A DNA stretch of 64,000 nt from Macrostomum lignano (GCA_002269645.1 NIVC01000019.1:868001-932000); one strand, 5' to 3'. Shown: positions 20,126 through 63,500, counted from the stretch's first letter. Numbers and translations: made by a program. The notes: generated by a model not told the origin, from the letters alone.

Positions 20126-20556
20126 GGCAATCTTCTAGTTTCGCATGTTTAATTCAAACTGTTTTTAAAACAACAGTTAACGACAATTTTGTTTTATGTT
20201 TTATGCCTCAGATGCATAATAGTGCGCCACACAGAAAAGGATGTTCCCAAAGGTGTTGCGCAGGTGGCAGCGATGCCAGATAAATTTGTCCAAGTGGGTA
20301 TTGAACAGGGCCTTGGACGTGCCATGCATGGCCCTGAAATGGGCCTCAGCGTGGGCCCATGTGCCCTCCACTGTGTTCCTGTGGACTTCTGGGTGGTTAG
20401 GATCCACAAAGTGCAGCCAGTGGTTCACCATCAAATGATTGGGCAGTTTGGTTGTATGTCTGCCACTGGTCGATGATAATGTGAGTACCTGCTTTGCTGA
20501 AAATAAATAATTAAAAATGCTTTAAAAAATTAAATGTGCGAAACTAGAAGATTGCC
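20126..20556 (-). mobile_element. Non-autonomous Merlin (IS1595/ISXO2-like) DNA transposon, family B, 431 bp
   Basis: ~29-bp TIR GGCAATCTTCTAGTTTCGCA(T/C)(G/A)TTTAATT and a perfect 8-bp TSD CTGTTTTG (20118-20125 and 20557-20564). ORF 20201-20434 VNHWLHFVDP...NTVEGTW...HLDKFIW matches the DDE_Tnp_IS1595 C-terminal motif. Confidence 0.9.
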
Positions 20557-30855: not shown

Positions 30856-33800
30856 CACTCTCAGATTCACCCGCACCGAATCTGCAATCTCCCCGCCCCG
30901 CAGGTGCTGTACAACATGTTCACCCAGGCCAAAGCAGCCATGGTCAGCCACGGCGTGGAAGAGTGGCACCCGACCTCCATAGAGATAGCCGGCACCGCTG
31001 TGTACAGCATTCACGTTGCCGTCACCGGCTTAATCATTGGCATCGCTTGCGGCGTCCTGGCGTCCGGCCTGATGCGCATCCTGCCCAATGCCGGCAATCA
31101 GAACCTGGCCGTGCTCATTGTGGTCATCTCCGGCTACCTCAGCTTCTACTTAGCTGAGCTCATTGCCGCATCTGGCATTCTATCGTGAGTTCTAGATCTA
31201 GATTAATCAACTCATGATATGCCCCGCTCATATATGCTTTGCCTGAAAAATCAAATTTTCAGCACATTCGTCTGCTCAATTGTGATGTCAATCTACCTGG
31301 CCAACCTGACTCCAATCTCTCAGAGCTTTCTTCGTCAGAGTACTAAAAGCTACGCTGAAATCTCCGAAGGCTTTATTTACCTGGTTATGGGCGTGTCGGC
31401 TCTGCAATTATTCTTTGGCACAAGCACTCCGAGCAATGTTATTGATGTGCCGTTCATATTTATCACTCTGTTTCTGTGCATTGTGCTCCGGTTTGCTTGT
31501 GAGTACTTTTTCTTTATTATGTCTATTGTTTTTAAATTTGTTTCCCTATTGACTCACGTCACGACTGAGTGTGAGTCACCTTTGACTCGTGTCACAGCTG
31601 AGTGTGATTCACATTTGACTCGTTTCACAGCTGAGTGTGAGTCACCTTTGACTCGTGTCACAGCTGAGTGTGAGTCACCTTTGAATCGTGTCACAGCTGA
31701 GTGTGAGTCACATTTTACTCATGTCACAGCTAAGGGTGGGTCACATTTGACTCGTGTCACAGCTGATGGTGGGTCACTAATAACTCATGTCACAGATGAG
31801 GGTGAGTCACATTTGACTCGTGTCACAGCTGAGTGAGTCACATTTGACTCATGTCACAGCTAAGGGTGAGTCACATTTGACTCATGTCACAGCTGAGTGT
31901 GAGTCACATTTGACTCATGTCACAGCTAAGGGTGGGTCACATTTGACTCATGTCACAGCTGAGTGTGAGTCACCTTTGACTCGTGTCACAGCTGAGTGTG
32001 AGTCACATTTGACTCATGTCACAGCTAAGGGTGGGTCACATTTGACTCGTGTCACAGCTGATGGTGGGTCACTAATAACTCATGTCACAGATGAGGGTGA
32101 GTCACATTTGACTCGTGTCACAGCTGAGTGAGTCACATTTGACTCATGTCACAGCTAAGGGTGAGTCACATTTGACTCATGTCACAGCTAAGGGTGAGTC
32201 ACATTTGACTCATGTCACAGCTAAGGGTGGGTCACATTTGACTCATGTCACAGCTGAGTGTGAGTCACATTTGACTCATGTCACAGCTAAGGGTGGGTCA
32301 CATTTGACTCATGTCACAGCTGAGTGTGAGTCACCTTTGACTCGTGTCACAGCTGAGTGTGAGTCACATTTGACTCATGTCACAGCTAAGGGTGGGTCAC
32401 ATTTGACTCGTGTCACAGCTGAGTGAGTCACATTTGACTCGTGTCACAGCTGAGTGTGAGTCACATTTGACTCATGTCACAGCTAAGGATGGGTCACTGA
32501 TGACTTATGTCACAGCTGATGGTGGGTCACTAATGACTCATGTCACAGCTGAGAGTGGGTCGCTGATTACTACTGATACCACAGCTGAGATCTAAGCTGA
32601 GGGTTGGTCACTGATGACTCATACCACAGCTAGTAAATTTGTTAAACGTTGATCCAACAAGCCTATTACTAAATCATTTGAACTGCAGGTGTCTACGGCA
32701 TTGGCTACTTGCTCAAGCTCGGCTCTTTAACCGAACTTCGAGCTTCTGATTTCTTTATTCTTTCCTACGGCGGCCTTCGGGGCGCGATCGCGCTGGCGCT
32801 CAGTCTAATGCTGGATCGGGGGCACTATAAATTTGCGAATCACTTTTTTGCTTGCACCATGATGATGGTGCTGCTGACCTGCTTCATCAATGTGAGAGGA
32901 CTGCTGGCTGCTGTTTGACCTTGAGCTTGATCACCTCAGACTCCAGTGTAGGGTGGAACACATTTGATTATAGGATGGAACAAAGACTCCAGTATAGGGT
33001 GGAACAAAGACTTCAGTACAGGATAAAAGAAAGACTCCATTCTAAGATGGAATAAAGACTCTAATGTAGACTGAAATACAGACTATTATAGGAAGGAACA
33101 AAGACTCCAGTGTAGGATGAAACAAAGACTCCATTGTAAGATGGAATAAAGACTCTAGTATAAAATTGAACAAAGACTGCAGTATAGGATTAAACAAAGA
33201 CTCGCGTTCAGGCTTGCTTCTTTGTCTTTATTCTAGGATAAAAAAAGTCGTTCATTTTCGTCACTGATTTTTAGGGCATATCGCTGAAGCCGCTCATCAT
33301 GCTGGCCAAAATTGAAATTGACGAAAGCGTGGAGGACAGCCTCTGGGACCAGATTATGAATAGGGTGAGTGTATTGTATTTGTGGCGAATTTTGCATTTC
33401 ATTTACTCTCGTCGCTTCTTTCTCTGCTATTAACTCCTCTGCTTAAAACAAATTTATTCATTTGATTTAACTCAGACATGCGACTACGTGGGCTTCTTCA
33501 TGGGCTCGCTAACAGGCTATCAGCCTCTGATGAAGCGCATCTACCTAGGGTGAGTTGCTTTTGTGATCCGTCTGCTTCTTATGGATAATGTAGCTAGGCG
33601 AATCTCCTCCCAGATCCTCAGTTGCTGGGCCAGCCTCCCAGATCCTCAGCTGCTGGGCCAGCCTCCCAGATCCTCAGCTGCTGGGCCAGCCTCCCAGATC
33701 CCCAGTTGCTGGGCCAGCCTCCCAGATCCTCAGCTGCTGGGCCAGCCTCCCAGATCCTCAGCTGCTGGGCCAGCCTCCCAGATCCTCAGCTGCTGGGCCA

Positions 33801-36800
33801 GCCTCCCAGATCCCCAGTTGCTGGGCCAGCCTCCCAGATCCTCAGCTGCTGGGCCAGCCTCCCAGATCCTCAGCTGCTGGGCCAGCCTCCCAGATCCTCA
33901 GCTGCTGGGCCAGCCTCCCAGATCCTCAGCTGCTGGGCCAGCCTCCCAGATCCTCAGCTGCTGGGCCAGCCTCCCAGATCCTCAGCTGCTGGGCCAGCCT
34001 CCCAGATCCTCAGTTGCTGGGCCAGCCTCCCAGATCCTCAGTTGCTGGGCCAGCCTCTCAGATCCTCAGTTGCTGGGCCAGCCTCCCAGATCCTCAGTTG
34101 CTGGGCCAGCCTCCCAGATCCTCAGTTGCTGGGCCAGCCTCTCAGATCCTCAGTTGCTGGGCCAGCCTTCCAGATATCCAGGTGCTTGGCCAGCCTCCCA
34201 GATCCTCAGTTGCTGGGCCAGCCTCCCAGATCCTCAGTTGCTGGGCCAGCCTCCCAGATCCTCAGTTGCTGGGCCAGCCTCTCAGATCCTCAGTTGCTGG
34301 GCCAGCCTTCCAGATATCCAGGTGCTTGGCCAGCCTCCCAGATCCTCAGTTGCTGGGCCAGCCTCCCAGATCCTCAGTTGCTGGGCCAGCCTCCCAGATC
34401 CTCAGTTGCTGGGCCAGCCTCCCAGATCCTCAGTTGCTGGGCCAGCCTCCCAGATCCTCAGTTGCTGGGCCAGCCTCTCAGATTCTCAGTTGCTGGGCCA
34501 GCCTCCCAGATCCTCAGTTGCTGGGCCAGCCTCCCAGATCCTCAGTTGCTGGGCCAGCCTCTCAGATCCTCAGTTGCTGGGCCAGCCTTCCAGATATCCA
34601 GGTGCTTGGCCAGCCTCCCAGATCCTCAGTTGCTGGGCCAGCCTCCCAGATCCTCAGTTGCTGGGCCAGCCTCCCAGATCCTCAGCTGATGGGTTTGAAA
34701 AGTAAAACTTGCATTAACGGCAAGCTACCAGTGCATACATTTGCTCTCTCTCACTCGCTGCCTCATTCAGTTGGAACCGGTTCAACGACAAGTATCTTCG
34801 GCGCGCCCTGCTGAAATCGAAGGTATACAACGAAGCTCAAGACGAGGGCATCTACGAGCTGCACCGCAAAATTGTAGCCGACGAATTTCTAAAATTTGCT
34901 ACTCAAAGCAAGTCGCTCATCGATTTGAATGCCCTGCGCTCAGACTCCATGGTGTATGCCATTCGCAGAGTCAGCTCTATGGGGTGAGTGAGGCGCGGTT
35001 TCCGGAGCGCCTGGGTGCACACTAATGGGTCACAGTGGGTCACATATTGAGCCACAAAGCGGGGTTGCATGAGAGATCACATATGGGGCAGGTGCAAAGT
35101 GGGTCACAGTTGTTCGCATGTAGGGTACAAGTACATAGAGCGTAACAGTGGATCACATGTGGAGCGCATAGTGGGTCGCATGTGGGTCGCAAAGTGGGTC
35201 ACTTGGGTGTCGCATATTGCGTCAAATTGGGTCACATGTAAGTTGCATAGTGGGTCACAGTGGTTTACATGTAGGGCACAAAGGCGTCATGGTGGGTCAA
35301 ATTTAGGTCGCATAGTGAGTCACATGTGTAAATCGCAAAGTGGGTCACATGTTAGGGCATATAGTGTGTCACATATGGGGCACATATTAGGTCACATGGG
35401 AGTCGCACATTGCGTCAAAGTGGGTCACATGTGGAGCGCAGAGTGGGTCAGTTGGTCACACAGTGCTTCACAGGACGACCAGCCATATAGGGTGAATAGT
35501 GCTTCACAGTGGGTCACAATGGGTCACATGTGGAGTGCATAGTGGATCACAGGAACCATTCTGTCAGCAAGACTATCGCTAACGAGCCCGCAACGCGCAC
35601 CCCTCCCCCCCCCAGCAACACCGGCATGGTGCACTCCGCCTCATCGCATCGCAGTCTCAACCTGCCGCCAATAGTCCGCCAGGCGTTGTCAGTCGGCGAA
35701 ACCCTTGACCAGCTGGATACCGACACCTACCAGCAGGAGCACAACAATCCCGTGCTGGATATGGAGGCCCTTAGCAACAACCTGGCTAAATCCGAGCGCG
35801 ACCAGGACGACCAGCAGAATCACCACCGGCATTTCATGCGCGACAATCGCATCATCAATCCGCGCTCATGGCAGGACAAAAACCACAAGCCGACCGGGTC
35901 CTCCTCTGCCAACAATCTGGAGGCTCTGGCCAAGCAGCAGCAGCAGTCTGGGGATCAGCTGCACCCGCCTCACCTGTCCGCCAATCCCCGGGTCAAATTC
36001 TCCATCAACGCCGATCTGGACGATGACGAAGCCGACGACGACAATGCCGACGCTAAGAGCGCCAGCTCCGGCACGATTCAATTCCTCACTACTGGCGATG
36101 AGAAGCCGGAGAAGTCGGAGAAGCAGCAGCAACAGGATGAGGCACATCCAGCTGCTGCAGAAGACTCCGAGAGCACTCTGCCCTATGCGTCTCGCTACTA
36201 TGCGCATCATCCGCACATTATCCAGCTGCCGAGGCACAGTCGCAATAATCTAGAGATGTCAACCATTGTTCGCAAAGGCAGCGACGCGGCCCTGTTGGAT
36301 CCGGCTGCTGCCGCCGCCGTAACTTCAGCGGCCTCGGCTACTGGCAGCGGAAACGGCCGGCTGGGCAAGAAAAAGTCGGTCAGCTTTGCGATGCTGTCCC
36401 CGGATCAGGGTGAGTTCATTCTGTACTCTGAAGATTTCTGTGGCATTTGGTTTCTGCTATTTTGTGTAGTATGAGTAATTAGCTTTCGTAATAGGCTCTA
36501 AAGCGCTTCGATGTACACCTTGTCTATCCGTCAATGTGCAGTGGATGGCCTCTATCTTCAGTGTAGCCTGTCTATGGCCTCTATCTCCATTCTAGCCTGT
36601 CTATGGCCTCTATCTCCATTCTAGCCTGTCTATGGCCTCTATCTTCAGTGTAGCCTGTCTATGGCCTCTATCTCCATTCTAGCCTGTCTATGGCTTCTAT
36701 CTTCAGTGTAGCCTGTCTATGGCCTCTATCTTCAGTGTAGCCTGTCTATGGCCTCTATCTCCATTCTAGCCTGTCTATGGCCTCTATCTCCATTCTAGCC

Positions 36801-44644: not shown

Positions 44645-47600
44645 TCATCCATAATAAACCGATCGCATCTCGAATCGATTCGAACTTGGCCCGCTCTCGT
44701 AGCCGCCATTCGAATAATAGTTATCATTGGCCTTCCCGGGCTGCGGCGCCGGCGTCCGGTTGGTGCCGCCGTCCGCCTGCCGGGAGGAGCCGCCGGCCCG
44801 CAGAGCTTTCTCGAGGCCGAGCAGCGGAGCTTCCACCAGCATGGAGAGGACCAGACTGACCAGGAAGGTGAGCATGATGCTGGCCAGGTAGATCATGATC
44901 TGCAGTGGATTTGGGGAACACCGAATTTTTTTAGACTTACTTGTATGACGATTAGTATCGCGAAATTAGTAATGCAGAACCTAGCAGTCTGCACTTCCAA
45001 TGATCATTTCAAGCCTGCAGTTGCCATTCGTTGAGGTGTATGACCGATTTCATTTCCCAATGACCGATTTCAGCTCCTAATGATCAATTTCAGCTCCCAA
45101 TGACCGATTTCAGCTCCCAATGACCGATTTTAGCTCCCAATGACCGATTTCAGCTCCAAATGACCGATTTCAGCTCTTAATGACCGATTTCAGCTCTTAA
45201 TGACCGATTTCAGCTCCCAATGACTGATTTCAGCTCCCAATGACCGATTTCACCTCCAAATGACTGATTTCACCTCCCAATGACCGATCTCAGCTCCCAA
45301 TGACCGATTTCACCTCCCAATAACCGATCTCAGCTCCCAATGACCGATTTCAGCTCCCAATGACAGATTTCAGCCTCAATGACCGATTTCAGCTCTTAAT
45401 GACCGATTTCAGCTCCCAATGACTGATTTCAGCTCCTAATGACCGATTTCAGCTCCCAATGACTGATTTCAGCTCCTAATGACCGATTTCACCTCCAAAT
45501 GACTGATTTCACCTCCCAATGACCGATCTCAGCTCCCAATGACCGATTTCACCTGCCAATAACTGATCTCAGCTCCCAATGACCGATCTCAGCTCCCAAT
45601 GATCGATTTCAGCTCCCATGACAGATTTCAGCCTCAATGACCGATTTCAGCTCCCAATGGCCGATTTCAGCTCCCAATGACAGATTTCAGCCTCAATGAC
45701 CGATTTCAGCTCCCAATGGCCGATTTCAGCTCCCAATGACAGATTTCAGCCTCAATGACCGATTTCAGCTCCCAATGACCGATTTCAGCTGACAGATTTG
45801 ATCCTTATGACAGATTTTCAGCATCTCAGACTGATATTGCTTGTTATTGATCATTAAAGATCACTCACCAGCATTGAGTCAGACAGGTGGAATTTGGAGT
45901 CGTAGGTGTAAAAGAAGGCGAACATCACGCTGGCGTGCACGATGTAGGCGCAGTAGCTGAGCCGGGCCAGTGGGGTGAACCAGGACCAGGACAGCAGCTC
46001 GTTCACGGGGCCTGTGGGCGGCAGGAGAGGACAAGTGGAATTCTGGTATAGGTGGTTCATCTGTAGTCATGAGACACTAAAATTAGCTGCCGAAAAATAC
46101 GGCGATTTTCTACCATCGATAATGGGCAGATGTGCAACCGACAGCTCAGCCGCAGCTATCGCGCGGCGCATCTGAAGGCTGCGTACGGCTGTTCAGTCCA
46201 AGGACTGGGGGGTCGCCACACACACTCTCAACTACGTCAGCTAATGCTGGTACCCATTTCACAGCTGGGTGAACTGAAGCAATGCGGAGTTAAGTGCCTT
46301 CCTCAAGGACACAAATTGTTCCGAGTGAGTCGAGAATCGAACCCCCGACCTTTCAGTCCCTTGATAATTATAATTAGAGTTTTTCATATACTCTACTCAC
46401 AGTAAAATGGACAGAATATTGCTTGTATTAAATTAATAATATTTGAGCTTCTTAACTACTCTGCTGAAAGTAAAAATAGAAGAAAAATACGTAAAAGAAT
46501 ATTAATCAATACCGTGCCCTCATACATTACCTCCATAGCCGTAGACGCAGGCGAACACAACCCAGGCAACGCAGAGGGCGAATCCCGGACGCAGGAAGGA
46601 CCAGTAAACCGTCACCTGTTGCAGCGTCAGCGGCGGTCCCGTATCGGCAATCTGGCCCTGCACCAGGTACAGCAGGGCCAGGCCTCCCGCTGCCGCGATC
46701 GCCCAGCACAGCAGCGCCACCAGCTGAAGAGAAAGTTGCAGCAATTGGGTGGCATTGCTATGTACAGCGCGACAATTTTGTTACATTGTTGGCACCGCAA
46801 ACTATACTGTGACATTCTTGACATCACACAATACTGCTGTGACCCAGTCAGCGTCAGACTAAAAGGATCACCAACATTTCTGCGCCGCATACAAAATCCT
46901 GCAGGTAACGGTAACTGAGGATCACCTTGGGCATCCTGATGGTCTTCCTAGTGGCCAGGACGTAGCCAAGCAAAATTCCAATCGCGTAGGCGCCCATGCG
47001 GCAGTAGGGCTTGATGTAGATCGTCTCGTAGTACCTGCAATTGTCAGATAGAAATTTCTGTTTCATATAAACCAATTATCGACCTGCCTTTACAATAGAT
47101 CATCGGCAAAAAGACTCCGTTGATAAGATTCTCGCGAGTTCCACGAATAACAAAAACTGCTCACGTCTTCTCCGGATCGTAACCGTCTGTCTCTCCGGGC
47201 ACAAAGTTCAAGTGGCCGCGCCGGAAGCCGTACTGATAGTTGAGCACGCCCGTGCACACCATGCTGCCAGCCACAACAATGACCGAGGCCACTGATCCGA
47301 ATATTAGGCCGCCACTGCAAGCATTGGTTAAAGTTGGGCGAAACTTAATTGATCAACAGATGTGACTTTCCTTGATTTGAATTTTAGGTGGTTAATTTAA
47401 CACTAGAAAATCAGTTCTTTGACTCGCGGAATTATTTTTCTGTAATTTGGAATGTCTCCAATTGGTGCCGTCCTAGAGATTTCAAGGTCACGCTAAAAAA
47501 TCACATCTCTCATGGACGAAGCTCCCTTTAATTTGGATCGTCTCTGATTGGCTACGGTACAAGACATTTCAAGGTCACGCTAAAATCACGCCACTTATGG

Positions 47601-50600
47601 AAGAAGCTCCTTTAATTTGGATCGCCTCTGATTGGCTACGGTAAGAGATTTCAAGGTCAGGCTAAAAATCACGCCACTCATGGAAGAAGCTCCTTTAATT
47701 TGGATCGCCTCTGATTGGCTACGGTAAGAGATTTCAAGGTCAGGCTAAAAATCACGCCACTCATGGAAGACGCTCCCTTTAATTTGAATCGTCTCTGATT
47801 GGCAACGGTATGAGATTTCAAGGTCACGCAAAAAATCACACCTCCGAACCGTGCATGCATAGTGGAAGTATAAAAACTCACAATACAAATGGCAGCAGTA
47901 GAAGCGGCGATAGCAGGTACATCTGCATATCATTGGCCAAGTACCAGGTGTGACCGAGGCACTGCAGAATGGAAAATAGAGATTACTTTGGTCTAGGAAG
48001 AAGCCTTCACATTCTAATTGAAATACAGTTACAATCTATGCCATTGCTTGCCAGTGATGTGATAAATTATGGCTTCAGAGCAGTTACGCCACTGTGCCAT
48101 CCTGCTTGTCAGAGACAAATGTTTTTTATTAGAGAGAAAATTATTTTGGTTTTTCAACGATTTGCTAAAATAAACAAGCGGGAACAGAATAAAGACTTGA
48201 TCGGCGCAAAAACCGTCTGACACGCGCACAATTTAATTTCGTGTCGTCAATATTTCCCAACACTTCTTTGCGCAAAATAATCAAAGCATCGAACTGAAAT
48301 TTTTTAATTCATCATCTCAGCTCCGCCGCTCCCTCCGCAGCCAGGCGATGAAATCCTCTGTCTTGAAGATCGTGGAGCCCGGCCCGACCTTCTGTTGGTA
48401 TTTCTTCAGGTCCTGCTTGCGAATACCCAGAGCGATGCGCTGACCAAACGTAGTTGTAAAGTACTTGTCGACCTCGCGAAACTCCAACTGGCCCGTCTCC
48501 TCTTCGTCGATGTTCTCGAATATCAGCTGCCAGGTCTCCTCTTCGCGGGCCTCCTCCGGGTAGATGCCGAGCAGCAGCTTGTACTCGCGCAGCGTGATCT
48601 TGCCGTCCCGGTTCGCGTCCAGCACTTCGAACATCTCCAGAGCCGACGACTCAGTCAGGCCGTCCTTCTTGCATACCGCCTTCAAGCCTTCGAATGTGAT
48701 GAAGCCGCGTTTCTCGGTGTCCACGTCGTTGAACCACTTCATCAGCAGCTGCTTGTCCGGCTTCTGCCGGGCCGCCGCCCCTGCCGCAGGCTGCTGCTGC
48801 GGCTGCTGACGCGACGAAAACTTCTGCGATTTGCCGCTGCGCTGCTGACTCCGCCGCGGTGAATTCTGACGGCCGTCCATGACTGTTCGGTGGTGCCGCT
48901 TGACGACTTCGTCGGTTTCACTACGCAAAACTGATTGACAGGCTTTGCAATCAAAACCAAGCGGGGGGGCCGTCGCATAGCACAGGGGGGATTGAGCGGT
49001 CGCTGCATTCTTTAGTATTAATCAGCTTTTGTTCCCGCCAACTGGGATGCTGGGTTCCGGCCATAGACAATTCTGCTGCCAGACTGATGCTTTTATGACT
49101 GATGTCTAAGCTGGGACTTTAGATCTGGTGGCTCTTACGAGGTTAGTGTATGAGGTGTTGTTATCAGCATTAGGAGTATAGGGGATTTGCACTGGCATCA
49201 CTCACATGTGGCAGTGAGGGATCGGGATTACCAGTTTGTGGTGGAGATTGGGGATCCGACATCTTCTGAGTAGGAATTATAGGGATCAGAATTTTGAGTA
49301 GGGATTTTTGAGATCAGAGATTTGGGATTCGACTTTGGAGTAGGGATTATTAAGATCAGGGGTTTGGGATCCGAATTTGGAGCAGGGATTATTGAGATCA
49401 GGGATTCGGGATCCGACTTTTGAGCAGGGATTATCGGGATCAGGGATTTGGAATCCGAATTTTCAGTAGGGATTATTGAGATCAGGGATTTAGTATCCGA
49501 CTTCTGAGTAGGGATTTGGGATCCGACTTTCGAGTAGGGATTATTGACATCAGGGATTTGGGATCCGACTTCTGAGTAGGGATTTGGGATCCGACTTTCG
49601 AGTAGGGATTATTGTGATCAGGGATTTTGGATCCAAATTTTGAGCAGGGATTATTGGGATCAGGGATTATTGGGATCAGGGATTTGGGATCCAAATTTTG
49701 AACAGGGATTATTGGGATCAGGGATTTGGGATCCGAACTTTGAGCAGGGATTATCGAGATTAGGTAGTGTTGATCCGACTTTTGAGTGGGGATTATTGAG
49801 ATCAGGGATTTGGGATTCGACTTTTGAGTAGGGAATATTGAGATCCGGGATTTGGCATCAGAATTTTGAGTGAGGATTATTGAGATCAGCGATTTGGGAT
49901 TAGAGTTTTAAGTAGGGATTATTGAGATCAGGGATTTGGGATCCGAATTTTGAGCAGGGATTATTGAGATAAGGGATTTGGGATCACAATTTTGAGTAGG
50001 GATTATTGGGATCAGGGAGCGGATATACGAGAATCCGAGTTCCTTTCTCCTCACTCACAGCAATGGAGTCGCCCACATTGGCAAAGTTCTGCGCATAGAA
50101 CATGAGCGCCCACCAAGACTTCGGACAGCCGGCCACATCCACTGGAGTCCGATCCGGCGATAGGAACGGCCCATTGCCGAAGTAGCCGGTCAGAGACCAG
50201 TGCCAGAACAGGAAGAACATCAACACGGGCGTCAGCCTCCAATAGCGATGGAAATAGAAGAGCGCCCAGAATTTCCAACTTCTCAAAGTACTCCGGCATT
50301 TCTCTTTGTCGGCGATGCCCACCTGGCGGCAGAACACGTAGGCTACCAGGGCGCCGCTGAGCATGAAGAATGAGTCCACTGAGGTGGTGGCGTTGATGAT
50401 GATTACGGCCTGCCAGCGCTTGCGAAAGTCGTTCAGGAGTTGCAGCGGGTTGTCTGGTGGGTGAGATTGGATGAGAATAGATTAAGATAAGATAGGGCTA
50501 TATCAAGATAGGGTTACACTAGCTCTAGATCTGATGAGACTATAGATCTCTGATAAGACTAGATCACTCTGATGAGACTAGATCACTCTGATGAGACTAG

Positions 50601-53600
50601 ATCACTCTGATGAGACTAGATCACTCTGATGAGACTAGATCACTCTGATGAGACTAGATCACTCTGATGAGAATAAATCTAGATTTAACGAGACTAGATA
50701 TATATTTGATGAGATTCTATATTTGATGAGACTAGATCTCTCTCATGAGACTAAATCACTCGTATGAAACTAGATCACTCTGATGAGACTAGATTACTCT
50801 GATGAAACTAGATCACTCTGATGAGACTAGATCACTAGTATCAGGATGATACGATCGTTTTCTAGGGTCGGTGAGGTTAGAAATTTCTAGAATCTGGGTG
50901 GGACTAGATCTCTAAAGAACAGAGATCCCTCATAAATCGGGGTGCGAATAGATCACTGAGGTTAGATTTCTCTGAGATTGGTGATGAGACTAGATCTCTT
51001 TGCAATCGGGTGAGATTAGATCAGCATGCGGTGCAGGCCCTCACCCAAAAGCGGGGCGATAAACAGTAGCGTGTGACCCAGAATGACCCAGAAGATGCTG
51101 AGCACTCGAATCCCATTGATGCAGCCAAGCGATCCGCCGGAAGCCGGAGCGAACAGCTTGTTGAGGTTGCTGCGCAGGCAGAAAGCTCGGCAGATGTCTC
51201 TGTAAACGTCTCCTGCAATGTGCGAACGCCTTGCTAGCATTAAAATGACCAAATGTACTTTTCAATTTGTCTAAAGTTCTACAGTGGATTCCGGTGACTC
51301 ACTCTGCGCCTCGGGATATCGCGAGTCAACGAAGGCGGTCACAGCCGTGGCCAGAAGTATGAGAAACACGAGCAGTCCTGTGAGACAGCTGCAGTTGAGG
51401 ATTGGCTGGATTGCTCTATGACCAGACACTCTGACCAACTACAATACTGTATGACCAACTAGAATACTCTATGACCAACTACAATACTCTATGACCCACT
51501 AGGATACTTTATGACCAACTATGATACTCTATGACCAGCTAGGATACTCTATGACCAACTAGGATACTCTATGACCAACTATTATACTCTATGACCAACT
51601 ACAATACTCTATGACCAACTGGGATACTCTATGACCAACTAGGATACTCTATGACCAACTATTATACTCTATGACCAACTACAATACTCTATGACCAACT
51701 AGGATACTCTATGACCAACTAGGATACTCTATGACCAACTATTATACTCTATGACCAACTAAAATACTCTATGACCAACTACAATACTCTATGACCAACT
51801 AGGATACTTCATGATCAACTAGGATACTCTATGACCAACTAGGATACTCTATGATCAACTGCAACATATACATGTGAGACACTGTATAATAAATTAAAAC
51901 ACTCTTATGACTAATTAAGACACCCCATAGCCAACCAAGATATTATATGACCAAACAAGACAACTTATGACCAATAGGACACTGTATGAACAATAATACA
52001 CACCGTGACTCACTAAGGCAACCCCCATGGAGAACTGAAACATTCTATGACGCATAATAAACTTTATGACCCACTAAGGCACCATATAGCTAACTAAGAC
52101 GCACACCTAGCAACTAGCATCCCAGAGCCCGCAGCACCCTCTCCCCGTCGCGCACATCACTGCGAGGGCGCCGCTGCTAAGTGGGTTGCTGGCCTCCACA
52201 TTCGTCTGCGCGCAGCCCTTCACCACCAGCTTGTAGGACTTGATGGTGTCCACTATGCCTCCGATGCCCGGCACTCCCTGCAGGATGGGGCCCAGCAGGT
52301 TGAGGACGATCTCCACCACTGGAATGTCGAAGATGATGCTGTTTTTTATTCAAGCTGAAGTCAGAATGATGGCCATTTAGATTTAGTGACAGAATTACAG
52401 CTAATGACAGAATTACAGTTAATGACAGAATTACAGCTAATGACAGAATTACAGCTAATTGTGATAGTCAGCCTGTGATAGTCAATTACAGCCAATGACC
52501 TCCTGTAACAGTTAATAACAGCTATATGACAGCCTGTGACAGTCAATTACAGCTTTATGACAGCCTGCGACAGTCAATTACAGCTAATGACAGCCTGCGA
52601 CAGTTAATTACAGCTGTATGACAGCCTGCGACAGTCAATTACAGCTAATGACAGCCTGTGACAGTTAATAACAGCTATATGACAGCCTGTGACAGTTAAT
52701 TACAGCTAATGACAGCCTGTGCCAGTCAATTACAGCTAATGACAGCCTGTGTGACAGTCAATTATAGCTAATGACAGCCTGTGACAGTCAATTACAGCTA
52801 ATGACAGTCTGTGACAGTCAATTACAGCTAATGACAGCCTGTGACAGCCAGTGACGCATACACGCATGTAAAAATTGAATGCCAGACTAGTACAGCGATT
52901 TACAGTCAAATAAATCCGAAATACAGCCAAATACAGCCAAATACAGCCATGAAAGACCCAACGCCGCAAGCCGGCAGATCCTCACCGAAATTGACAGCAA
53001 TCTCAGCGTCGATCCCTTTGCACGGATTCGGCAGGCACAGCGCCAGCTCCAGGCTGGTCTGCAGGCTGTCGCCACCGCTGAACGCCCGGCCTCCACTGTC
53101 AGTCGTTGAGTTGCCGCGGCTCTTCACGCCGAACATGCAATACCGACCGTTGGTATGTAACATCAGCGTACTCGTGTTGGTGCTGTCCTGGTACACCGGC
53201 AGCCGGATGCTTTCGCACTCCTCCCGGGACCCGATCCATCGGACATTGCCCAGCAGGATGCCCGCCTCCGGCTTGAAGATCGAATCCAGCCCTGGTAATG
53301 GGGGAGGGGGGCTGGTCATTGCCTGTCTCTCTGCCTGAGTCTCTGCCTTCTCCCTGCCTCTCTCCCTGCCTCTCTCCCTGCCTCTCTCCCTGCCTCTCTC
53401 CCTGCCTCTCTCCCTGCCTCTCTCCCTGCCTCTCTCCCTGCCTCTCTCCCTGCCTCTCTCCCTGCCTCTCTCCCTGCCTCTCTCCCTGCCTCTCTCCCTG
53501 CCTCTCTCCCTGCCTCTCTCCCTGCCTCTCTCCCTGTCTCTCTCCCTGCCTCTCTCCCTGCCTCTCTCCCTGCCTCTCTCCCTGCCTCTCTCCCTGCCCC

Positions 53601-54210: not shown

Positions 54211-54789
54211 TGAGGCAAGCGGTAGAGAGCTGGAAAGGCAGACAAGAGAACTTCTGCAACCCAGAACCGTCTGGGCGCTGTGCTCTTTCTTGGCCGCGAT
54301 TTTAAATAAGCATCGCAAGGCGCAACCTGCTGAGGTTTTTTATCTAATCTGCCCTGGCTGAATAATGAAAGAGGCGTGCCGAGTCAGCCCCGGCCTCTAA
54401 AGCGCCCAGGTGGGACCACCACTTCATTCGTCCGATTATTTTCTCCGTTCTAAAGGCTACCGCTGGGGGCTGATCTTGCATAAAACAAGTAGCAAAAAGA
54501 ACTTCGGCTGCCTACGAGTGCAAACATTTGGAAACGAAATTCTTTAGTCAACAAATTTGGCGACATGTCCCGCCTCACAGCGTTGATGCAGAGCTGCCAA
54601 TTCCGCTGAATCCTGAGAACACGCATGTAAAAGTGCCGCCAATACATATACTGCATGCACGCAGGCCGCGCTGCACTCATAACACACGCTCACAACGGGG
54701 TGTATAGCGGTCCAGACTTTCTATTCGTCTCACTCAGGCATGTACACTCTCTGTGACTTGAGGCTTGGCTCTCATTGGTGTGAATCGCT

Positions 54790-56010: not shown

Positions 56011-56627
56011 GGTATCAGTGCAGTAAGACCAGCTAATATCAAACAAGGGCAGTAGTCACTTGTGAAAATTTTGTTAAACACAGTAGGGGTTTAACGTACT
56101 GGCAGAAGATATTTGATATTTGATAAAGTCATTTAAGCAATTTGAGCACTTTTTGGAGCATGATTAACCTCTCGACAGAGAGCGCAGTCGCATTTTTTGT
56201 AAATCGAGCTGATAAAACTCAAACAAAAATGTTTCTGAAGCCCTAGAATAGACTGGATTTGCGGATAGATAAAACTAGTGAGCTTCTAAAGTAGCCCGAG
56301 CTTTACAAATCAACCCATATTTCGACATAAAAACTCCGGTTTGGCAATAAAAGAGCTAAGCTGGGTTGGCTATCTCACTTGATTTTTGTATCATTTCTGC
56401 TGTACCGACTTTATTTAATTATAATCATTTTGTTATATCGAGATAAAGAGCATTTTTATAACAAATAAAATAGTTCGTATAACCAAATAGGTACAAACTT
56501 TCTCCAAGGACTACTTGACTTTGTCGTCAAAGTCGTCCCTGACTTTTTCAAGCTTGACTTACTGACTGCATTTGAGACAATTCTGTCCATTTCGCTGACT
56601 CCTGAGTGCACGCAAGCGTGCCAATAC

Positions 56628-57346
56628 CAGCAACTGAGGCGCAGGCACCAAAGCCTGACAGCGCAACTAGCTCATTTTGGGCACTGGTAAAAGTACATGG
56701 CGCCCCTGGGTGCGTGCGGCCCTGGGTGCTGGCGCCCCTGGGTGCTGGCGCCCCTGGGTGCTGGCGCCCCTGGGTGCTGGCGCCCCTGGGTGCTGGCGCC
56801 CCTGGGTGCTGGCGCCCCTGGGTGCTGGCGCCCCTGGGTGCTGGCGCCCCTGGGTGCTGGCGCCCCTAGGTGCTGGCGCCCCTGGGTGCTGGCGCCCCTG
56901 GGTGCTGGCGTCCCTGAGTGCTGGCGCCCCTGGGTGCTGGCGCCCCTGGTTGCTGGCGCCCCTGGGTGCTGGCGCCCTGGGTGCTGGCGCCCCTGGGTGC
57001 TGGCGCCCTGGGTGCTGGCGCCCCTGGGTGCTAAACCCCTGGGTGCTGAACCCCTGGGTGCTAAACCCCTGGGTGCTGAACCCCTGGGTGCTAAACCCCT
57101 GGGTGCTAAACCCCCTGTTGCTAAAGCCCCTGGTGCTAAAGCCCCTGTTGCTAAAGCCCCTGGTGCTAAAGCCCCTGTTGCTAAAGCCCCTGGTGCTAAA
57201 GCCCCTGTTGCTAAAGCCCTGGTGCTAAAGCCCCTGTTGCTAAAGCCCCTGTTGCTAAAGCCCCTGGTGCTAAAGCCCCTGTTGCTAAAGCCCCTGTTGC
57301 TAAAGCCCCTGGTGCTAAAGCCCCTGGTGCTAAAGCCGACTCCGGA
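56628..57346 (+). mobile_element. Putative short interspersed element, copy 1: conserved ~75-bp head plus a 16/15-bp minisatellite tail, flanked by a 31-bp direct repeat
   Basis: The head TGAGGC(G/A)CAGGCACCAAAG(C/T)CTGACAGCGCAA(C/T)TAGCTCATTTTGGGCACTGGTAAAAGTACATGGCGCCCCTGG is shared with 59345. Flanks GACTCCTGAGT(G/A)CACGCAAGCGTGCCAATAC at 56597-56627 and 57347-57377. Confidence 0.6.
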
Positions 57347-57532
57347 GACTCCTGAGTACACGCAAGCGTGCCAATACTGTACGCATGCACGCACTCATGC
57401 ACAGCTCACAAAGGGTGTACATCGGCCTTGGCTTTCTAATCGTCAAGTAGGTACAATCTGTTTCTTGGAGGTTGGACTGTTTCGGGTTATTAATTTTTGA
57501 GTTGAATTGGTTCGTCACTGTTCATTCCACTG

Positions 57533-60500
57533 TCACATCTTCCTGGAGGCGGTGGCGCCAACTCTGCGTTTCAATGGTGGCGTCACGTTTTCGTAGCCAT
57601 CTGGCGAGCTGCTCAGCACCGCCGCCGCCTCCGCCTCCTCCGATGCAGCTGCCGCCGCCTCCGCTGCCGCTGCGGCCGCTGCCACAATCAGCTCGGCTGA
57701 TGCGTCATCCGCTTCGCTGTCTGCGACCTTGGAGGGGGAATTAAATATACAGACAGTTAACATGATAAGCATAATCATTAAATACGACATAGTTGCAGAC
57801 AGTTGCCGACAATATGCTCGCACAGACGGCCTTCCATTTCTGCTTTTCATAAGGCACACCGGCAGACAAATATTGCACAGAACAGTTGCTACTGGCAGCA
57901 ACAGTCAATATAGTTATATAAGAAATATGCGTAGACAGACTACTTCAAGTAGCAAACGCAGCATAATTTTAACGGGTCGCCATTATAAACCCGAAATATC
58001 AGAATTCTGAAAAGCACCTTCTATCATTGTCTCGAAAAATCATGAACACGAAATTTCAAAAACCCGAAATATCACAAACCTGAAATATCACAAACCTGAA
58101 ATATCACAAACCCGAAATGTTACAAACCCGAAATATCACGAACCCAAAATATCACAAACCTGAAATATCACAAGCCCGAAATATCACAAACACAAATATC
58201 ACAAACCCGAAATATCACAAACCCGAAATAGCACAAGCCCAAAATATCACAAACCCGAAATATCACAAACCCGAAATATCACAAACCCGAAATATCACAA
58301 ACCCGAAATATCACAAACCCGAAATATCACAAACCCGAAATATCACAAGCCAGAAATATCACAAACCCGAAATATCACAAACCCGAAATATCACAAGCCA
58401 GAAATATCATAAGAGAGTTCAGTAACTCGCACTGCCCGACGAACTTGAAGTGCGCTACGCCAACGCAAATCCCAATAGTTGGAATTGCAAGCCCGGATCC
58501 CTATAGATCAGTATTTATCCCCAAAATAATTGCTCAGCCACTCTAGAGCAGTTGATGATCCCAGAGCTCTACTGGATTATTGCTTTTGCAGCTTCCGTTT
58601 CTGCTTCAAGCAATAGAAGATAATTGCCGTCTAAAAAAGTCAAAACGCTGTTGGTGCTGCGGTATCTGCCTGTTTTGGCGGTGGCGGGTTCGGTATGGGG
58701 AAGACAACCATGGATGGACCCTTCGAGATGAAGCTTTGAGGGAGGCTGGGTGATGGAACAGATCGATACAAGCAATTGTAGTGAGCTTGTGCCTTGTTAG
58801 CCCCAGTTTGTGCGCGCAATAGAGCGAAAGAGAGTGGAGGCTGAGCTGCAATGATGTAGCAGCTCGAGATGCAGAGGATTCTGCATGGATTGATATGAAG
58901 CAAGAACACACTGCTTCTGTTGCCAACTTCTGTTGCTTCTGTTGCTTCTGTTGCTTCTGTTGCTTCTGTTGCTTCTGTTGCTTCTGTTGCTTCTGTTGCT
59001 TCTGTTGCTTCTGTTGCTTCTGTTGCTTCTGTTGCTTCTGTTGCTTCTGTTGCTTCTGTTGCTTCTGTTGCTTCTGTTGCTTCTGTTGCTTCTGTTGCTT
59101 CTGTTGCTTCTGTTGCTTCTGTTGCTTCTGTTGCTTCTGTTGCTTCTGTTGTATTATTCTGCTTGTCCGAAAATCGGTGCAAAACTTTTTTCTGAACTCC
59201 ATAAAAACGATGCTCCGAATGAAGTGAAACAGTGGGAGCTCTCACTTCAGGAGCATTGGTGGCGGGGCGCCAGCATTGTGCGAATCATGTTGCAATCCAT
59301 TTTTTCTTATTAAATATCAGCACAGAACTTTATAGTCTCAATTTGAGGCACAGGCACCAAAGTCTGACAGCGCAATTAGCTCATTTTGGGCACTGGTAAA
59401 AGTACATGGCGCCCCTGGTGCTGGCGCCCCTAGGGCTAAAGCCCCTGTTGCTAAAGCCCCTGTTGCTAAAGCCCCTGTTGCTAAAGCCCCTGTTGCTAAA
59501 GCCCCTGTTGCTAAAGCCCCTGTTGCTAAAGCCCATGGTGCTAAAGCCCCTGGTGCTAAAGCCCCGGTTGCTAAAGCCCCTGGTGCTAAAGCCCCTGGTG
59601 CTAAAGCCCCTGTTGCTAAAGCCCCTGGTGCTAAAGCCCCTGTTGCTAAAGCCCATGGTGCTAAAGCCCCTGTTGCTAAAGCCCCTGTTGCTAAAGCCCC
59701 TGGTGCTAAAGCCCCTGGTGCTAAAGCCCCTGTTGCTAAAGCCCCTGGTGCTAAAGCCCCTGTTGCTAAAGCCCATGGTGCTAAAGCCCCTGGTGCTAAA
59801 GCCCCTGGTGCTAAAGCCCATGGTGCTAAAGCCCCTGTTGCTAAAGCCCCTGGTGCTAAAGCCCCTGTTGCTAAAGCCCCTGGTGCTAAAGCCCCTGGTG
59901 CTAAAGCCTCTGGTGCTAAAGCCCCTGGTGCTAAAGCCCCTGGTGCTAAAGCCCATGGTGCTGGCGCCCCTGGTGCTAAAGCCTCTGGTGCTAAAGCCCC
60001 TGGTGCTAAAGCCCCTGTTGCTAAAGCCCCTGTTGCTAAAGCCCCTGTTGCTAAAGCCCCTGTTGCTAAAGCCCCTGGTGCTAAAGCCCCTGTTGCTAAA
60101 GCCCCTGGTGCTAAAGCCCCTGTTGCTAAAGCCCATGGTGCTAAAGCCCCTGGTGCTAAAGCCCCTGTTGCTAAAGCCCCTGGTGCTAAAGCCCCTGTTG
60201 CTAAAGCCCATGGTGCTAAAGCCCCTGTTGCTAAAGCCCCTGTTGCTAAAGCCCCTGGTGCTAAAGCCCCTGGTGCTAAAGCCCCTGTTGCTAAAGCCCC
60301 TGGTGCTAAAGCCCCTGTTGCTAAAGCCCATGGTGCTAAAGCCCCTGTTGCTAAAGCCCCTGTTGCTAAAGCCCATGGTGCTAAAGCCCCTGTTGCTAAA
60401 GCCCCTGTTGCTAAAGCCCCTGGTGCTAAAGCCCCTGTTGCTAAAGCCCCTGGTGCTAAAGCCCCTGGTGCTAAAGCCCCTGTTGCATTCATTCAGCAAA

Positions 60501-63500
60501 AAAGTTTTTGATGGAAATTGAACTTTTTTGAGGCTATGGATAATACTTTGTAATTTAATAAAGCCTGCCGATATGTAGCGAGGAAAACTTTATAAAGCTA
60601 CAATACGGCACGAGCGAAAGAAGAGGACAGAGGCTGGTGGCTTTAATCCGATTTGCCAACCTCAATGTGGTGAATGGCGGTGAGCAGCAGGTGCCCGAAC
60701 TCGTTCGCCACCACCGACTTCCAGGCGTCGCGAAATGCGCTCAAGCAGGCCATGGCGACGCGCGATTCCGGGGCTAGAAGGTCGTGAGCTCGAGCCGCGA
60801 CTAGCAGCATGCTGCCCAGTGCCTGTAAGTGGTCGGGAATCAAATTGTGATGATGGGAGGAGGCAGAAAATGAATGAGCAGTTTAAAACTCAGATTAGGA
60901 ATTCAAAAGGATGAATATTTGGGATGGGATATTTGAGATATTTGAGATGGGATATTTGAGATGGGATATTTGAGATGGGATATTTGAGATGGGATATTTG
61001 AGATGGGATATTTGAGATGGAATATTTGAGATGGGATATTTTGAGATGGGATATTTAAGATGGGATATTTGAGATGAAATATTTGAGATGGGATATTTGA
61101 GATGGGATATTTGAGATGGGATATTTGAGATGGGATATTTGGGATGGGATATTTGAGATGGGATATTTGGGATGGGATATTTGAGATGGGATATTTGAGA
61201 TGGGATATTTGAGATAGGATATTTGAGATGGGATATTTGAGATGGGATATTTGAGATGAGATATGTTAGGATCAGACTGTAGAGGAGAGCCGTGACGGGC
61301 CAGCACCTGCAGGTGGTACTCCAGCCAGTCAGCGCCCGCAGTCCAGCAATCGTCTCCGGTCGGCAGTCGAGCCGCGACGCCGCTCGCCGCTACGCAGGCG
61401 CGCCAGGCGCTTTCCAGCCGGCGCCATCGATAATTGGCGCCAGTCGGCGGCGCGTCAGCAGCTTCAACAGCCTCGGCGATGAGGCCCGCCTGGCCGGCCA
61501 GCCGGAGACGCTCCTCAGCGCTCGGCGGCAGCTGCTGTCGGCGGAGTCGGCGCAGGCGGGACAGCACGCAGTCGGGCTGGGCGGCAGCGGACAGGCCGTC
61601 CAGGCAGTGTCGGGTGTGCGCGAAGGCCTCCTCGCGTAGGCGCTGGGCGCAGCGGCTCTCCGGATGCCGCAGGTGCAGCTTGCTGGCCGCCAGCAGCAGC
61701 GGCAGCGCCTTCTCCAGGCTGGACCGGGTGAGCGCCAGACGACAGCGGGCCGGCTCCGACCTCAGGTCGGCCTGGCGCTCACCGGACAGGCGGCCGAGCT
61801 GCACCAGGTGCTCGCCAAGGCTGGCAAAGGCCGGCATGAAGTCGGCGAATCTGATGGTATGCAACGTGGCGCAGTGATTAGATTTTGGTTGCAATGGTGT
61901 CCACAGCAGAACTTGTCTTAGGGGGGTGGGGTACCCGAGTGGTCCAGCGGTGCACTCTGATGTGCCAGCGGTCCAGGCTCGATTCCAAGTGCAGTCACTT
62001 TAATTTGAGGCTAAATTGGAAGCTCGGCTTGGCTCTGCTCGTACAATTGAAGTGTACATGCCTACCTAACGATAAAATAAAGTCAGGGCCGCTGTGCATT
62101 CCTGTGTGAGTGTGTGCCTGTGCGTATGACTGCGTACGTATCCGCGCGCTTGTGTGCCTGCTCAGGGGAGTCGGCGGAATGGGCAGTAATGTGACAATGT
62201 CGCTTAAATTAATAGAATCATAATAGAATCAGCTGACGTTCTATAGAGCAGGATGCTCAGAGATGAGCCGGTTCTCTAAAATCTCAAGTGCTCCAGAGAG
62301 CCTCCCTCCCCTGTACCTGGTGCAGTCCTCCAGGCACTCCAGGCAGCCCGTCGCTCGCTCCCCGCAGGCCAGCAGCTGCTGCAGGTTCAAACGGTCCGCA
62401 AGCGCCATCGTCCGCGTCATCGCCTCCACCAGACGACGCGCGGCGAGTCGAACCGCGTCGCCGTCCGTAGCGAACTTGGGCGACAGCACGGTGGTTGTCA
62501 TTGTCAGACGGGCCACGGCTCGACCGGCGGCGGCGGCGTCGCTACACGCAGCGTCGATGGCCTCGGCTAGTCGAGGAGGCGACTCGACGGCAACGCGCCG
62601 GCCGGCCGTGGCGAACTGGTCAGCGGCGCGGGCCACCCAGGCGCCGGTGTCGGCCAACAGCTGCGCTGTGGATTCGGCTGGCGGCGCCGAGGAAGAGCGC
62701 AGGCTGATCTCATCGTCACCGCCTGAGCGGCGCCTCCGGAACTTGAACAGGTTCTGCAGCTGCGGGTAGGTGAGTGTTGCTGTTGGTTGGTGTTGGTATT
62801 GGTGCCGAGGTTGCTAGTGCCGCGGGTGTTGGTGCACGGGGTGTTGGTGCATCGGGTGTTGGTGTATGGGGCTTTGTGTATGGGGTGTTGGTGTATGGGG
62901 TGTTGGTGTATGGGGTGTTGGTGTATGGGGTGTTGGTGTATGGGGTGTTGGTGTATGGGGTGTTGGTGTATGGGGTGTTGGTGTATGGGGTGTTGTTGCA
63001 TCGGGTGTTGATGTATGGGGTGTTGGTGTATGGGGTGTTGGTGTATGGGGTGTTGGTGTATGGGGCTTTGTGCATGGAGTGTTGGTGCACGGGGTGTTGG
63101 TGTATTGGGTGTTGGTGTATGGGGTGTTGGTGTATGGGGTGTTGTTGCATCGGGTGTTGATGTATGGGGTGTTGGTGTATGGGGTGTTGGTGTATGGGGC
63201 GTTGGTGTATGGGTGTTGGTGCACGGGGTGTTGGTGTATTGGGTGTTGGTGTATGGGTGTTGGTGCACGGGGTGTTGGTGTATTGGGTGTTGGTGTATGG
63301 GGTGTTGGTGTATGGGGTGTTGGTGTATGGGGTGTTGTTGCATCGGGTGTTGATGTATGGGGTGTTGGTGTATGGGGTGTTGGTGTATGGGGCGTTGGTG
63401 TATGGGTGTTGGTGCACGGGGTGTTGGTGTATGGGGTGTTGGTGTATGGGGTGTTGCTGCATCGGGTGTTGATGTATGGGGTGTTGGTGCCGGGGCTGTT

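What the first reader, a model, noticed from the sequence alone, without database searches (positions are those of the whole stretch)
56597..60486. Candidate satellite-seeding mobile element: shared head, minisatellite tail and 31-bp flanking duplication
Seen: two loci 2.7 kb apart share a ~75-bp head that ends in ATGGCGCCCCTGG, and each runs directly into a tandem array built from that last motif. Copy 1 progresses from GTGCTGGCGCCCCTGG (16 bp) to GTGCTAAACCCCTGG to GCTAAAGCCCCTG(G/T)T (15 bp). Copy 2 is almost entirely the last type. Copy 1 is bracketed by a 31-bp direct repeat with one mismatch, as expected for a target-site duplication. The head contains TAGCTCATTTTGG, weakly like a Pol III A-box; no B-box was seen. 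Known: SINE/LINE tails and Helentron-derived HINE/DINE-1 or pearl-type elements carry expandable tandem repeats. Inference: this could be a vehicle that delivers and grows minisatellites, giving a mechanism for the intron-filling pattern.
Basis: partly seen in the sequence, partly recalled or inferred. Interest (0 to 1): 0.7.

Follow-up and report, generated by a model that had tools for sequence, protein, structure and literature searches.

The report
Local copy of a neighbouring minisatellite
In the flatworm Macrostomum lignano, a minisatellite and 75 bp of its upstream flank were copied once into a site about 2 kb upstream, duplicating 31-40 bp of the target; this looks like a one-off local rearrangement rather than a transposon that seeds satellites, but the genome-wide count of the head that would settle this could not be run.

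Summary
A 75-bp head occurs at 56635-56709 and 59344-59418, 95% identical. Each head runs into a related 15/16-bp array. A 31-bp direct repeat with one mismatch brackets copy 1.

The window is Macrostomum lignano Mlig_3_7, NIVC01000019.1:868001-932000.

The repeat is a true target duplication. It lies in an old ~135-190-bp dispersed repeat ("R115"). Two other R115 copies in the window (54571-54760; 62050-62197, minus strand) carry that sequence once and uninterrupted.

The mobile-element reading is not supported:
- Two homeologous contigs carry the same repeat-array-repeat insertion without the head.
- Head 2 is ordinary unique flank, colinear in the homeolog, with no duplication at copy 2.
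- No tRNA, Rfam, A/B-box or inverted-repeat signal was found.
- None of the other 40 arrays has flanking repeats or a shared head.
- Three young arrays arose in place from one or two local units.

Best reading: a single local copying event, by template switch or by duplication then deletion, from the array about 2 kb downstream. It predates the homeolog split.

The genome-wide copy number of the head could not be tested here, so a dispersed family is not excluded (about 0.13).

The parts
56561..56627 (+). Left part of the interrupted R115 dispersed repeat. Its last 31 bp (56597-56627) are the left copy of the target duplication.
   Evidence: nhmmer with the R115 profile, E=7.6e-16. Exact repeat search.
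56628..56634 (+). 7-nt junction filler CAGCAAC. It is found neither in the target nor upstream of head 2.
   Evidence: Sequence. The 13-mer CCAGCAACTGAGG spanning this junction matches the minus strand of the 28-mer array at 33606-34693 exactly.
56635..56709 (+). Head copy 1 (75 bp). It is absent at this position in the homeologous contigs L004 and L005.
56710..57337 (+). Array 1: 16-mers, then 15-mers. It is present in all three genomic copies, with 43, 36 and about 58 units.
57347..57470 (+). Right part of the interrupted R115 repeat. Its first 31 bp (57347-57377) are the right copy of the target duplication.
   Evidence: nhmmer E=2.2e-33..
59344..59418 (+). Head copy 2, the presumed donor flank. 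Its last 13 nt (ATGGCGCCCCTGG) are the proto-unit of the array.
   Evidence: (colinear with homeolog L004, 98% identical).
59419..60486 (+). Array 2, the presumed donor array: about 72 copies of the 15-mer GCTAAAGCCCCTG(G/T)T. It has no flanking duplication.
54571..54760 (+). R115 paralog P3. It is an uninterrupted copy of the target and serves as a paralogous empty site.
   Evidence: Smith-Waterman score 62 against a null maximum of 26, across the joined flanks. nhmmer E=1.6e-58.
62050..62197 (-). R115 paralog c4, a second uninterrupted copy of the target.
   Evidence: nhmmer E=2.2e-13. Alignment.

Best explanation
This is a single local duplicative insertion, not a transposon family.

**Steps.**
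1. Array 2 grew in place at 59.4 kb from its own flank. The last 13 nt of the head are the first proto-unit, and the units grade from TGGCGCCCCTGG to GCTGGCGCCCCTGG to GCTAAAGCCCCTGG.
2. Around the time of, or shortly before, the split of the M. lignano homeologs, the 75-bp flank plus the start of this array were copied in the same orientation. The copy went into an R115 repeat about 2 kb upstream.
3. The copying was most likely a replication template switch of the FoSTeS/MMBIR type. The nascent strand left the template after ...CCAATAC, copied head plus array from the downstream locus, and resumed 31-40 bp behind its departure point. That created the 'target duplication'. A 7-nt filler remains at the left junction.
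4. Afterwards array 1 evolved a 16-mer variant and changed length by unequal exchange.
5. The head was then either lost by deletion in the L004/L005 lineage, or added later in the window lineage by repair copied from array 2. This is unresolved.

**Shown:** the insertion, the target duplication, the donor-like locus, the age, and the absence of the head in the homeologs.

**Inferred:** the direction (locus 2 to locus 1) and the template-switch mechanism.
For: - **The duplication is real.** P3 and c4 carry the 31-bp sequence once, with both flanks contiguous.
- **The only related sequence is nearby.** It lies 2.7 kb away in cis, in the same orientation.
- **Head 2 is ordinary flank.** It is colinear with its left flank in homeolog L004, with no boundary at the head's 5' end. 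There is no duplication at copy 2: its score of 18 is close to the null mean of 14.8.
- **The head is separable from the insertion.** L004 and L005 have left repeat, TGG, array, right repeat, without the head. There the duplication extends to about 40 bp (ATTYCGCTG plus the 31 bp).
- **The event is close in age to the homeolog split.** All differences between the repeat copies are lineage-private, so the two copies were identical at the split. Head 1 and head 2 are 95% identical, against about 93% for non-coding homeolog identity.
- **The left junction fits serial template switching.** The 13-mer at the left junction matches another array exactly. This would give a 5-nt TGAGG microhomology.
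- **Template switching is a described process.** Template-switch insertions are described in PMC8421209 and PMC5120786.
- **No transposon hallmarks were found**.
Against: - The genome-wide copy number of the head is unknown. Only about 73 kb of this haplotype plus two 20.7-kb homeologous stretches could be examined.
- A 31-40-bp clean duplication flanking an insert is also what target-primed reverse transcription can give.
- The filler CAGCAAC is not from locus 2, so a third, unseen source copy is possible.
- The 13-mer junction match was noticed post hoc.
- Whether the head was present in the original insertion cannot be polarised without an outgroup.
Confidence: 0.6

Rival explanations
1. 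This is a non-autonomous mobile element. Head plus expandable 15/16-bp tail would belong to a dispersed family. It would be mobilised in trans, for example by a LINE or Penelope-like reverse transcriptase, giving long variable target duplications. Copy 1 would be a bona fide transposition, and copy 2 would be an older or master copy.
For: - The target duplication of 31-40 bp is real, with paralogous empty sites.
- The two copies share a sharp 5' boundary at TGAGGC.
- The filler CAGCAAC is not derived from locus 2, so another source is possible.
Against: - There is no Pol III, tRNA or Rfam signal.
- There is no poly(A) or LINE-like tail, and no inverted repeats.
- Copy 2 has no duplication, and its head is colinear with flank DNA in the homeolog.
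- The same insertion lacks the head in L004 and L005.
- The only two copies seen are 2.7 kb apart.
- The other 40 arrays have no head and no duplication.
- The head peptide has no match among 1.84 billion representative proteins. This is weak evidence.
Confidence: 0.13
2. Two-step origin. First, a 2.7-kb tandem segmental duplication ran from the start of the repeat to within array 2. Then about 2 kb of the interior of the first unit was deleted, from the end of the repeat to the start of the head. On this reading the '31-bp duplication' is simply the retained start of the duplicated segment.
For: - The spacings agree: left repeat to right repeat plus the spacer equals head 1 to head 2, about 2.7 kb.
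- The order repeat, head, array, repeat, spacer, head, array is what this model predicts.
- A further deletion would explain the headless state of L004 and L005.
Against: - It needs two or three events where one template-switch event suffices.
- No remnant of the 2-kb interior is left at locus 1.
- The left breakpoint falls exactly at the end of the repeat in both lineages.
Confidence: 0.17
3. Assembly artefact. The head at copy 1 would be a chimeric consensus of long reads from the two similar arrays.
For: - The head at locus 1 is seen only in this one contig.
- The assembly is redundant and repeat-rich (PMC5730564).
Against: - Head 1 has three private substitutions and a unique 7-nt junction.
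- Repeat, array, repeat is reproduced in three independent contigs.
Confidence: 0.03

Closest known systems
Templated insertions by replication template switching (FoSTeS/MMBIR) and complex chromosomal insertions (PMC8421209, PMC5120786)
   Same: - The donor is nearby in cis and in the same orientation.
- The sequence at the insertion point is duplicated.
- There is a short filler and possible microhomology at the junction.
- It is a single event, not a family.
   Different: - The copied segment here is a minisatellite with 75 bp of flank.
- The event is an old, fixed germ-line event shared by homeologs.
- The mechanism is inferred from structure only.
Helentron-derived non-autonomous elements carrying tandem repeats (HINE, DINE-1, pearl, Cg_HINE; PMC4067079, PMC7492417)
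   Same: A unique flank is joined to a tandem array, and the array is found at more than one place.
   Different: - HINEs have left and right modules with subterminal inverted repeats and a 3' palindrome.
- They insert at TT and make no target duplication.
- Here there is no right module, no inverted repeat, a non-TT target and a 31-40-bp duplication.
SINEs and LINE-mobilised retrocopies
   Same: The insertion is flanked by a target duplication of variable length, which can be long.
   Different: - There is no Pol III promoter, and no head derived from tRNA, 5S or 7SL.
- There is no poly(A) or LINE-derived tail.
- The tail is a 15/16-bp minisatellite.
- Only two linked copies are seen.
Ordinary minisatellite birth and turnover (slippage and unequal exchange)
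   Same: - Array 2 grades out of its own flank.
- Arrays change unit type and copy number between homeologs.
- Three young arrays in these loci arose from one or two local units.
   Different: Array 1 did not arise in place. It is a copy inserted into an unrelated repeat.

Membership tests
SINE (Pol III non-autonomous retroelement) | Head derived from tRNA, 5S or 7SL, with internal A and B boxes | tested here: not met
   ARAGORN found 0 genes. Rfam found nothing in the head at E<=1 and nothing in the whole window at gathering score. No A-box or B-box within 2 mismatches in the head.
SINE (Pol III non-autonomous retroelement) | 3' tail of poly(A), a short simple repeat or a LINE-derived end | tested here: not met
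   The insert ends in 15-mer units (...GCTAAAGCC) 9 nt before the right repeat. There is no A-rich tail.
SINE (Pol III non-autonomous retroelement) | Target-site duplication | tested here: met
   A duplication of 31 bp (about 40 bp in the homeologs), with two paralogous empty sites. This is longer than usual for SINEs.
SINE (Pol III non-autonomous retroelement) | Many dispersed copies | not testable with these tools
   There are only two copies, 2.7 kb apart, in all DNA held. No tool searches the M. lignano genome by DNA.
HINE / Helentron-derived (DINE-1, pearl) | Left and right modules with subterminal inverted repeats and a 3' palindrome | tested here: not met
   There is no right module: the array abuts the right repeat. 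The inverted-repeat score of the ends is 14, at chance level. The head fold z-scores range from +0.5 to -0.95.
HINE / Helentron-derived (DINE-1, pearl) | Insertion at TT or a T-rich site without target duplication (PMC4067079, PMC7492417) | tested here: not met
   The target is ...CCAATAC|TGTACGC, and 31-40 bp are duplicated.
HINE / Helentron-derived (DINE-1, pearl) | Central tandem repeats | tested here: met
   15/16-bp arrays are present.
Template-switch (FoSTeS/MMBIR-type) templated insertion | Template located nearby in cis, with the insert copying it | tested here: met
   Head plus array of copy 1 matches the locus 2.7 kb downstream in the same orientation: 95% in the head and 82% over 712 bp.
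Template-switch (FoSTeS/MMBIR-type) templated insertion | Microhomology or templated filler at the junctions | tested here: inconclusive
   The 7-nt filler plus flanking bases (13-mer CCAGCAACTGAGG) match another array exactly, implying TGAGG microhomology. This was found post hoc. The right junction shows 1-2 nt at most.
Template-switch (FoSTeS/MMBIR-type) templated insertion | Unique event rather than a repeated family | not testable with these tools
   This needs a whole-genome search for the head.

The most novel reading that the evidence does not exclude
Head plus array could be one member of a genome-wide family of non-autonomous elements in Macrostomum. Such elements would insert with unusually long (31-40 bp) target duplications and carry an expandable 15/16-bp array, so that they seed minisatellites at new sites. 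The two linked copies would simply be the ones visible in this window.
Probability: 0.12. Interest if true: 0.7.

Novelty: new member of a known kind. Interest (0 to 1): 0.3.

Why it matters
About 42% of this 64-kb window is minisatellite DNA, in 41 arrays that are almost all of different unit types. A transposon that delivers arrays would have been an attractive explanation.

The homeolog comparison points elsewhere:
- Arrays are long-lived residents at fixed positions.
- New arrays arise in place from local 9-29-bp segments. In one case this happened inside a probable ~77-bp intron.
- Occasionally an existing array is copied to a nearby site by a rearrangement.

This gives a concrete, testable picture of how flatworm introns and intergenic DNA fill with tandem repeats. 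It also supplies a clean example of a minisatellite copied with a long target duplication.

Tried and rejected
1. **Protein search with a vinculin-family exon (61265-61999, minus strand)** to reach homeologs. It gave no hit, so the gene is not annotated in the collection.
2. **Metagenome scan with the head core.** 0 matches.
3. **Last protein search, with a chimeric query** (NRF exon 1 plus head peptides). 8000 candidates were collected and none scored. The search was probably swamped by low-complexity words, so it was wasted.
4. **Head peptide against 1.84 billion representative proteins.** 0 hits. This is uninformative for non-genic DNA.
5. **Exact look-up of the ORFs that run through the arrays.** They are not in the collection.
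6. **Extended homology** between the head and the right flank, and between the flanks of copy 1 and copy 2. Not significant.
7. **Pol III, tRNA, Rfam, inverted-repeat and RNA-fold tests of the head.** All negative.
8. **Coding reading of the arrays** (AKAPV or LKPLL frames). Rejected: the 16-mer in copy 1 breaks the frame, and there is no annotated gene between 54276 and 58880.
9. **Replitrons** were looked at because of their variable target duplications. They occur in plants, algae and protists and have different ends, so they are not relevant.

Full report
**Source.** A single-exon HD-domain gene (732-1388) and a single-exon EF-hand gene (48317-48880, minus strand) of the window are recorded on NCBI GCA_002269645.1, contig NIVC01000019.1. 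This places the window at 868001-932000. That assembly is Macrostomum lignano Mlig_3_7 (PMC5730564; PMC10733133). The paper reports 15% simple and tandem repeats and a redundant assembly caused by recent polyploidy. In this window 42% of the bases lie in about 41 tandem arrays of different unit types.

**Observation.**
- The head is at 56635-56709 and 59344-59418. It is 75 bp long with 3 substitutions.
- Array 1 (56710-57337) runs from 16-mers to 15-mers. Array 2 (59419-60486) holds about 72 copies of the 15-mer.
- The 31-bp direct repeat is at 56597-56627 and 57347-57377, with one mismatch and 0 expected by chance.
- Among 41 arrays, this is the only one with a flanking repeat. It scores 57 against a null maximum of 27. 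Copy 2 scores 18.
- The proposed A-box does not come within 2 mismatches of the consensus, and no B-box exists.
- ARAGORN and Rfam find nothing. The head does not fold better than shuffled sequence.

**The repeat is a true target duplication.**
- The sequence around it belongs to an old dispersed repeat of about 135-190 bp, which I call R115.
- A profile built from it finds three places in the window:
  - 54571-54760 (plus strand, E=1.6e-58)
  - the two halves at 56561-56628 and 57335-57470
  - 62050-62197 (minus strand, E=2.2e-13)
- In both uninterrupted copies the 31-bp sequence occurs once, with the left and right flanks contiguous. Joining the two flanks of copy 1 in a script aligns across the junction with score 62, against a null maximum of 26.
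- So head plus array sits in R115 as an insert, and 31 bp of the target are duplicated.

**Homeologous copies.**
- The EF-hand protein's 90% cluster led to two more contigs of the same assembly: L004 (NIVC01000856.1) and L005 (NIVC01004475.1).
- They are about 93% identical to the window in unique non-coding DNA and about 98% in coding DNA. They are about 99% identical to each other. That makes two lineages.
- Both carry the left repeat, then TGG, then the array directly, then the right repeat. There is no head.
- In them the duplication extends to about 40 bp (ATTYCGCTG plus the 31 bp).
- All differences among the four repeat copies are private to one copy. The two copies were therefore identical when the lineages split, and the insertion is only a little older than the split.
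- Head 2 is present in L004, 98% identical. It is colinear with its left flank, with no discontinuity at the head's 5' end.
- Head 2 is therefore ordinary unique flank. Its last 13 nt are the proto-unit from which array 2 grades out.

**What cannot be resolved.** The head at locus 1 was either part of the original insert and later deleted in the L004/L005 lineage, or added later in the window lineage by repair copied from array 2.
- Head 1 shares four states with window head 2 against L004, and has three private changes.
- With three sequences this cannot be rooted.

**Mechanism.**
- The only related sequence in about 73 kb of this haplotype and 2 x 20.7 kb of homeologs lies 2.7 kb downstream in the same orientation.
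- The donor-like locus has no duplication.
- The insert has no tail, no inverted repeats and no right module.
- The left junction has a 7-nt filler, CAGCAAC. Together with its neighbours it forms a 13-mer, CCAGCAACTGAGG. This 13-mer matches the minus strand of the 28-mer array at 33606-34693 exactly. That would give a TGAGG microhomology with the start of the head. It fits serial template switching, but I found it post hoc.
- I therefore favour one replication template-switch event, or equivalently a 2.7-kb tandem duplication followed by an internal deletion. I place a mobile element at about 0.13.
- HINE/Helentron membership fails on three defining features. These are no target duplication, a TT target, and subterminal inverted repeats with a 3' palindrome (PMC4067079, PMC7492417).
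- SINE membership fails on head and tail.

**The general 'intron-filling' idea.**
- All 16 arrays between 38.3 and 58.9 kb sit at the same positions and in the same order in L004 and L005. Their copy numbers differ widely, for example 16, 58 and 79 copies of one 19-mer.
- Flanks of different arrays share no common head.
- Three young arrays show birth in place:
  - The perfect 25-copy 9-mer at 58927-59151 is about 2 copies in L004.
  - L005 alone has a 29-mer (x7.8) and a 28-mer (x6.6). L004 and the window (46779-46845) have the unit once. That site is a ~77-bp gap between two ORF blocks of the NRF-domain gene and is probably a small intron.
- Arrays here therefore arise mainly by local amplification, not by delivery.

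**Limits.**
- No tool could search the M. lignano genome by DNA.
- The protein-based detours failed or were uninformative.
- The decisive genome-wide count of the head remains to be done.

Noticed in passing
window 1-64000: 42% of the window is tandem arrays: 41 arrays of almost all different unit types (9-167 bp), each about 0.2-1.2 kb long. They lie between GC-rich exons of several genes: HD-domain, ankyrin, EF-hand, NRF/acyltransferase-3 and vinculin-family.
   Followed up: partly
window 58927-59151; L004 (reverse complement) about 20286-20310: A perfect 25-copy 9-mer array (CTTCTGTTG) in the window is only about 2 copies in the homeolog. It was born in place after the homeolog split.
   Followed up: yes
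L005 (reverse complement) 8296-8698; window 46779-46845: L005 alone has two young arrays: a 29-mer (x7.8) and a 28-mer (x6.6). Its 99%-identical partner L004 and the window carry the unit once. The site is a probable ~77-bp intron of the NRF-domain gene, so this is intron filling by local amplification.
   Followed up: yes
window 54571-54760 (+), 56561-56627 with 57347-57470 (+), 62050-62197 (-): An old dispersed repeat of about 135-190 bp ('R115') is present three times, about 70% identical, in both orientations. It has no Rfam match. Its class is unknown; it could be a SINE or a MITE.
   Followed up: partly
window 13759-14463 vs 16264-16807; 24537-25429 vs 51432-52000: Two more pairs of related arrays, 76-77% identical. 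One pair is 2.5 kb apart in direct orientation and the other is 27 kb apart and inverted. They share no flank. Local copying of arrays may be recurrent.
   Followed up: no
window 56627-56639 vs 33606-34693 (minus strand): The 13-mer spanning the junction of left repeat, filler and head (CCAGCAACTGAGG) is identical to part of the 28-mer unit of another array 22 kb away. It may be a templated filler or it may be chance.
   Followed up: partly
window 60646-62813 (-), perhaps also 57533-57722 (-): ORFs with a Vinculin-family Pfam match (E=6.4e-7) have no counterpart in the protein collection. This is an unannotated gene or a pseudogene. If it is real, copy 2 lies in its last intron and copy 1 just past its stop codon.
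   Followed up: partly
window 57631-57679; L004 (reverse complement) 18705-18878: A GC-rich 21/30-bp repeat (CCGCCGCCTCC...) in a possible exon has 2.3 copies in the window and 5.8 copies of a 30-mer in L004.
   Followed up: no
window 56508-56552: The window has about 44 bp (CTCCAAGGACTACTTGACTTTGTCGTCAAAGTCGTCCCTGACTTT) that are absent from L004 and L005. The stretch is bounded by ACTTT microhomology.
   Followed up: no
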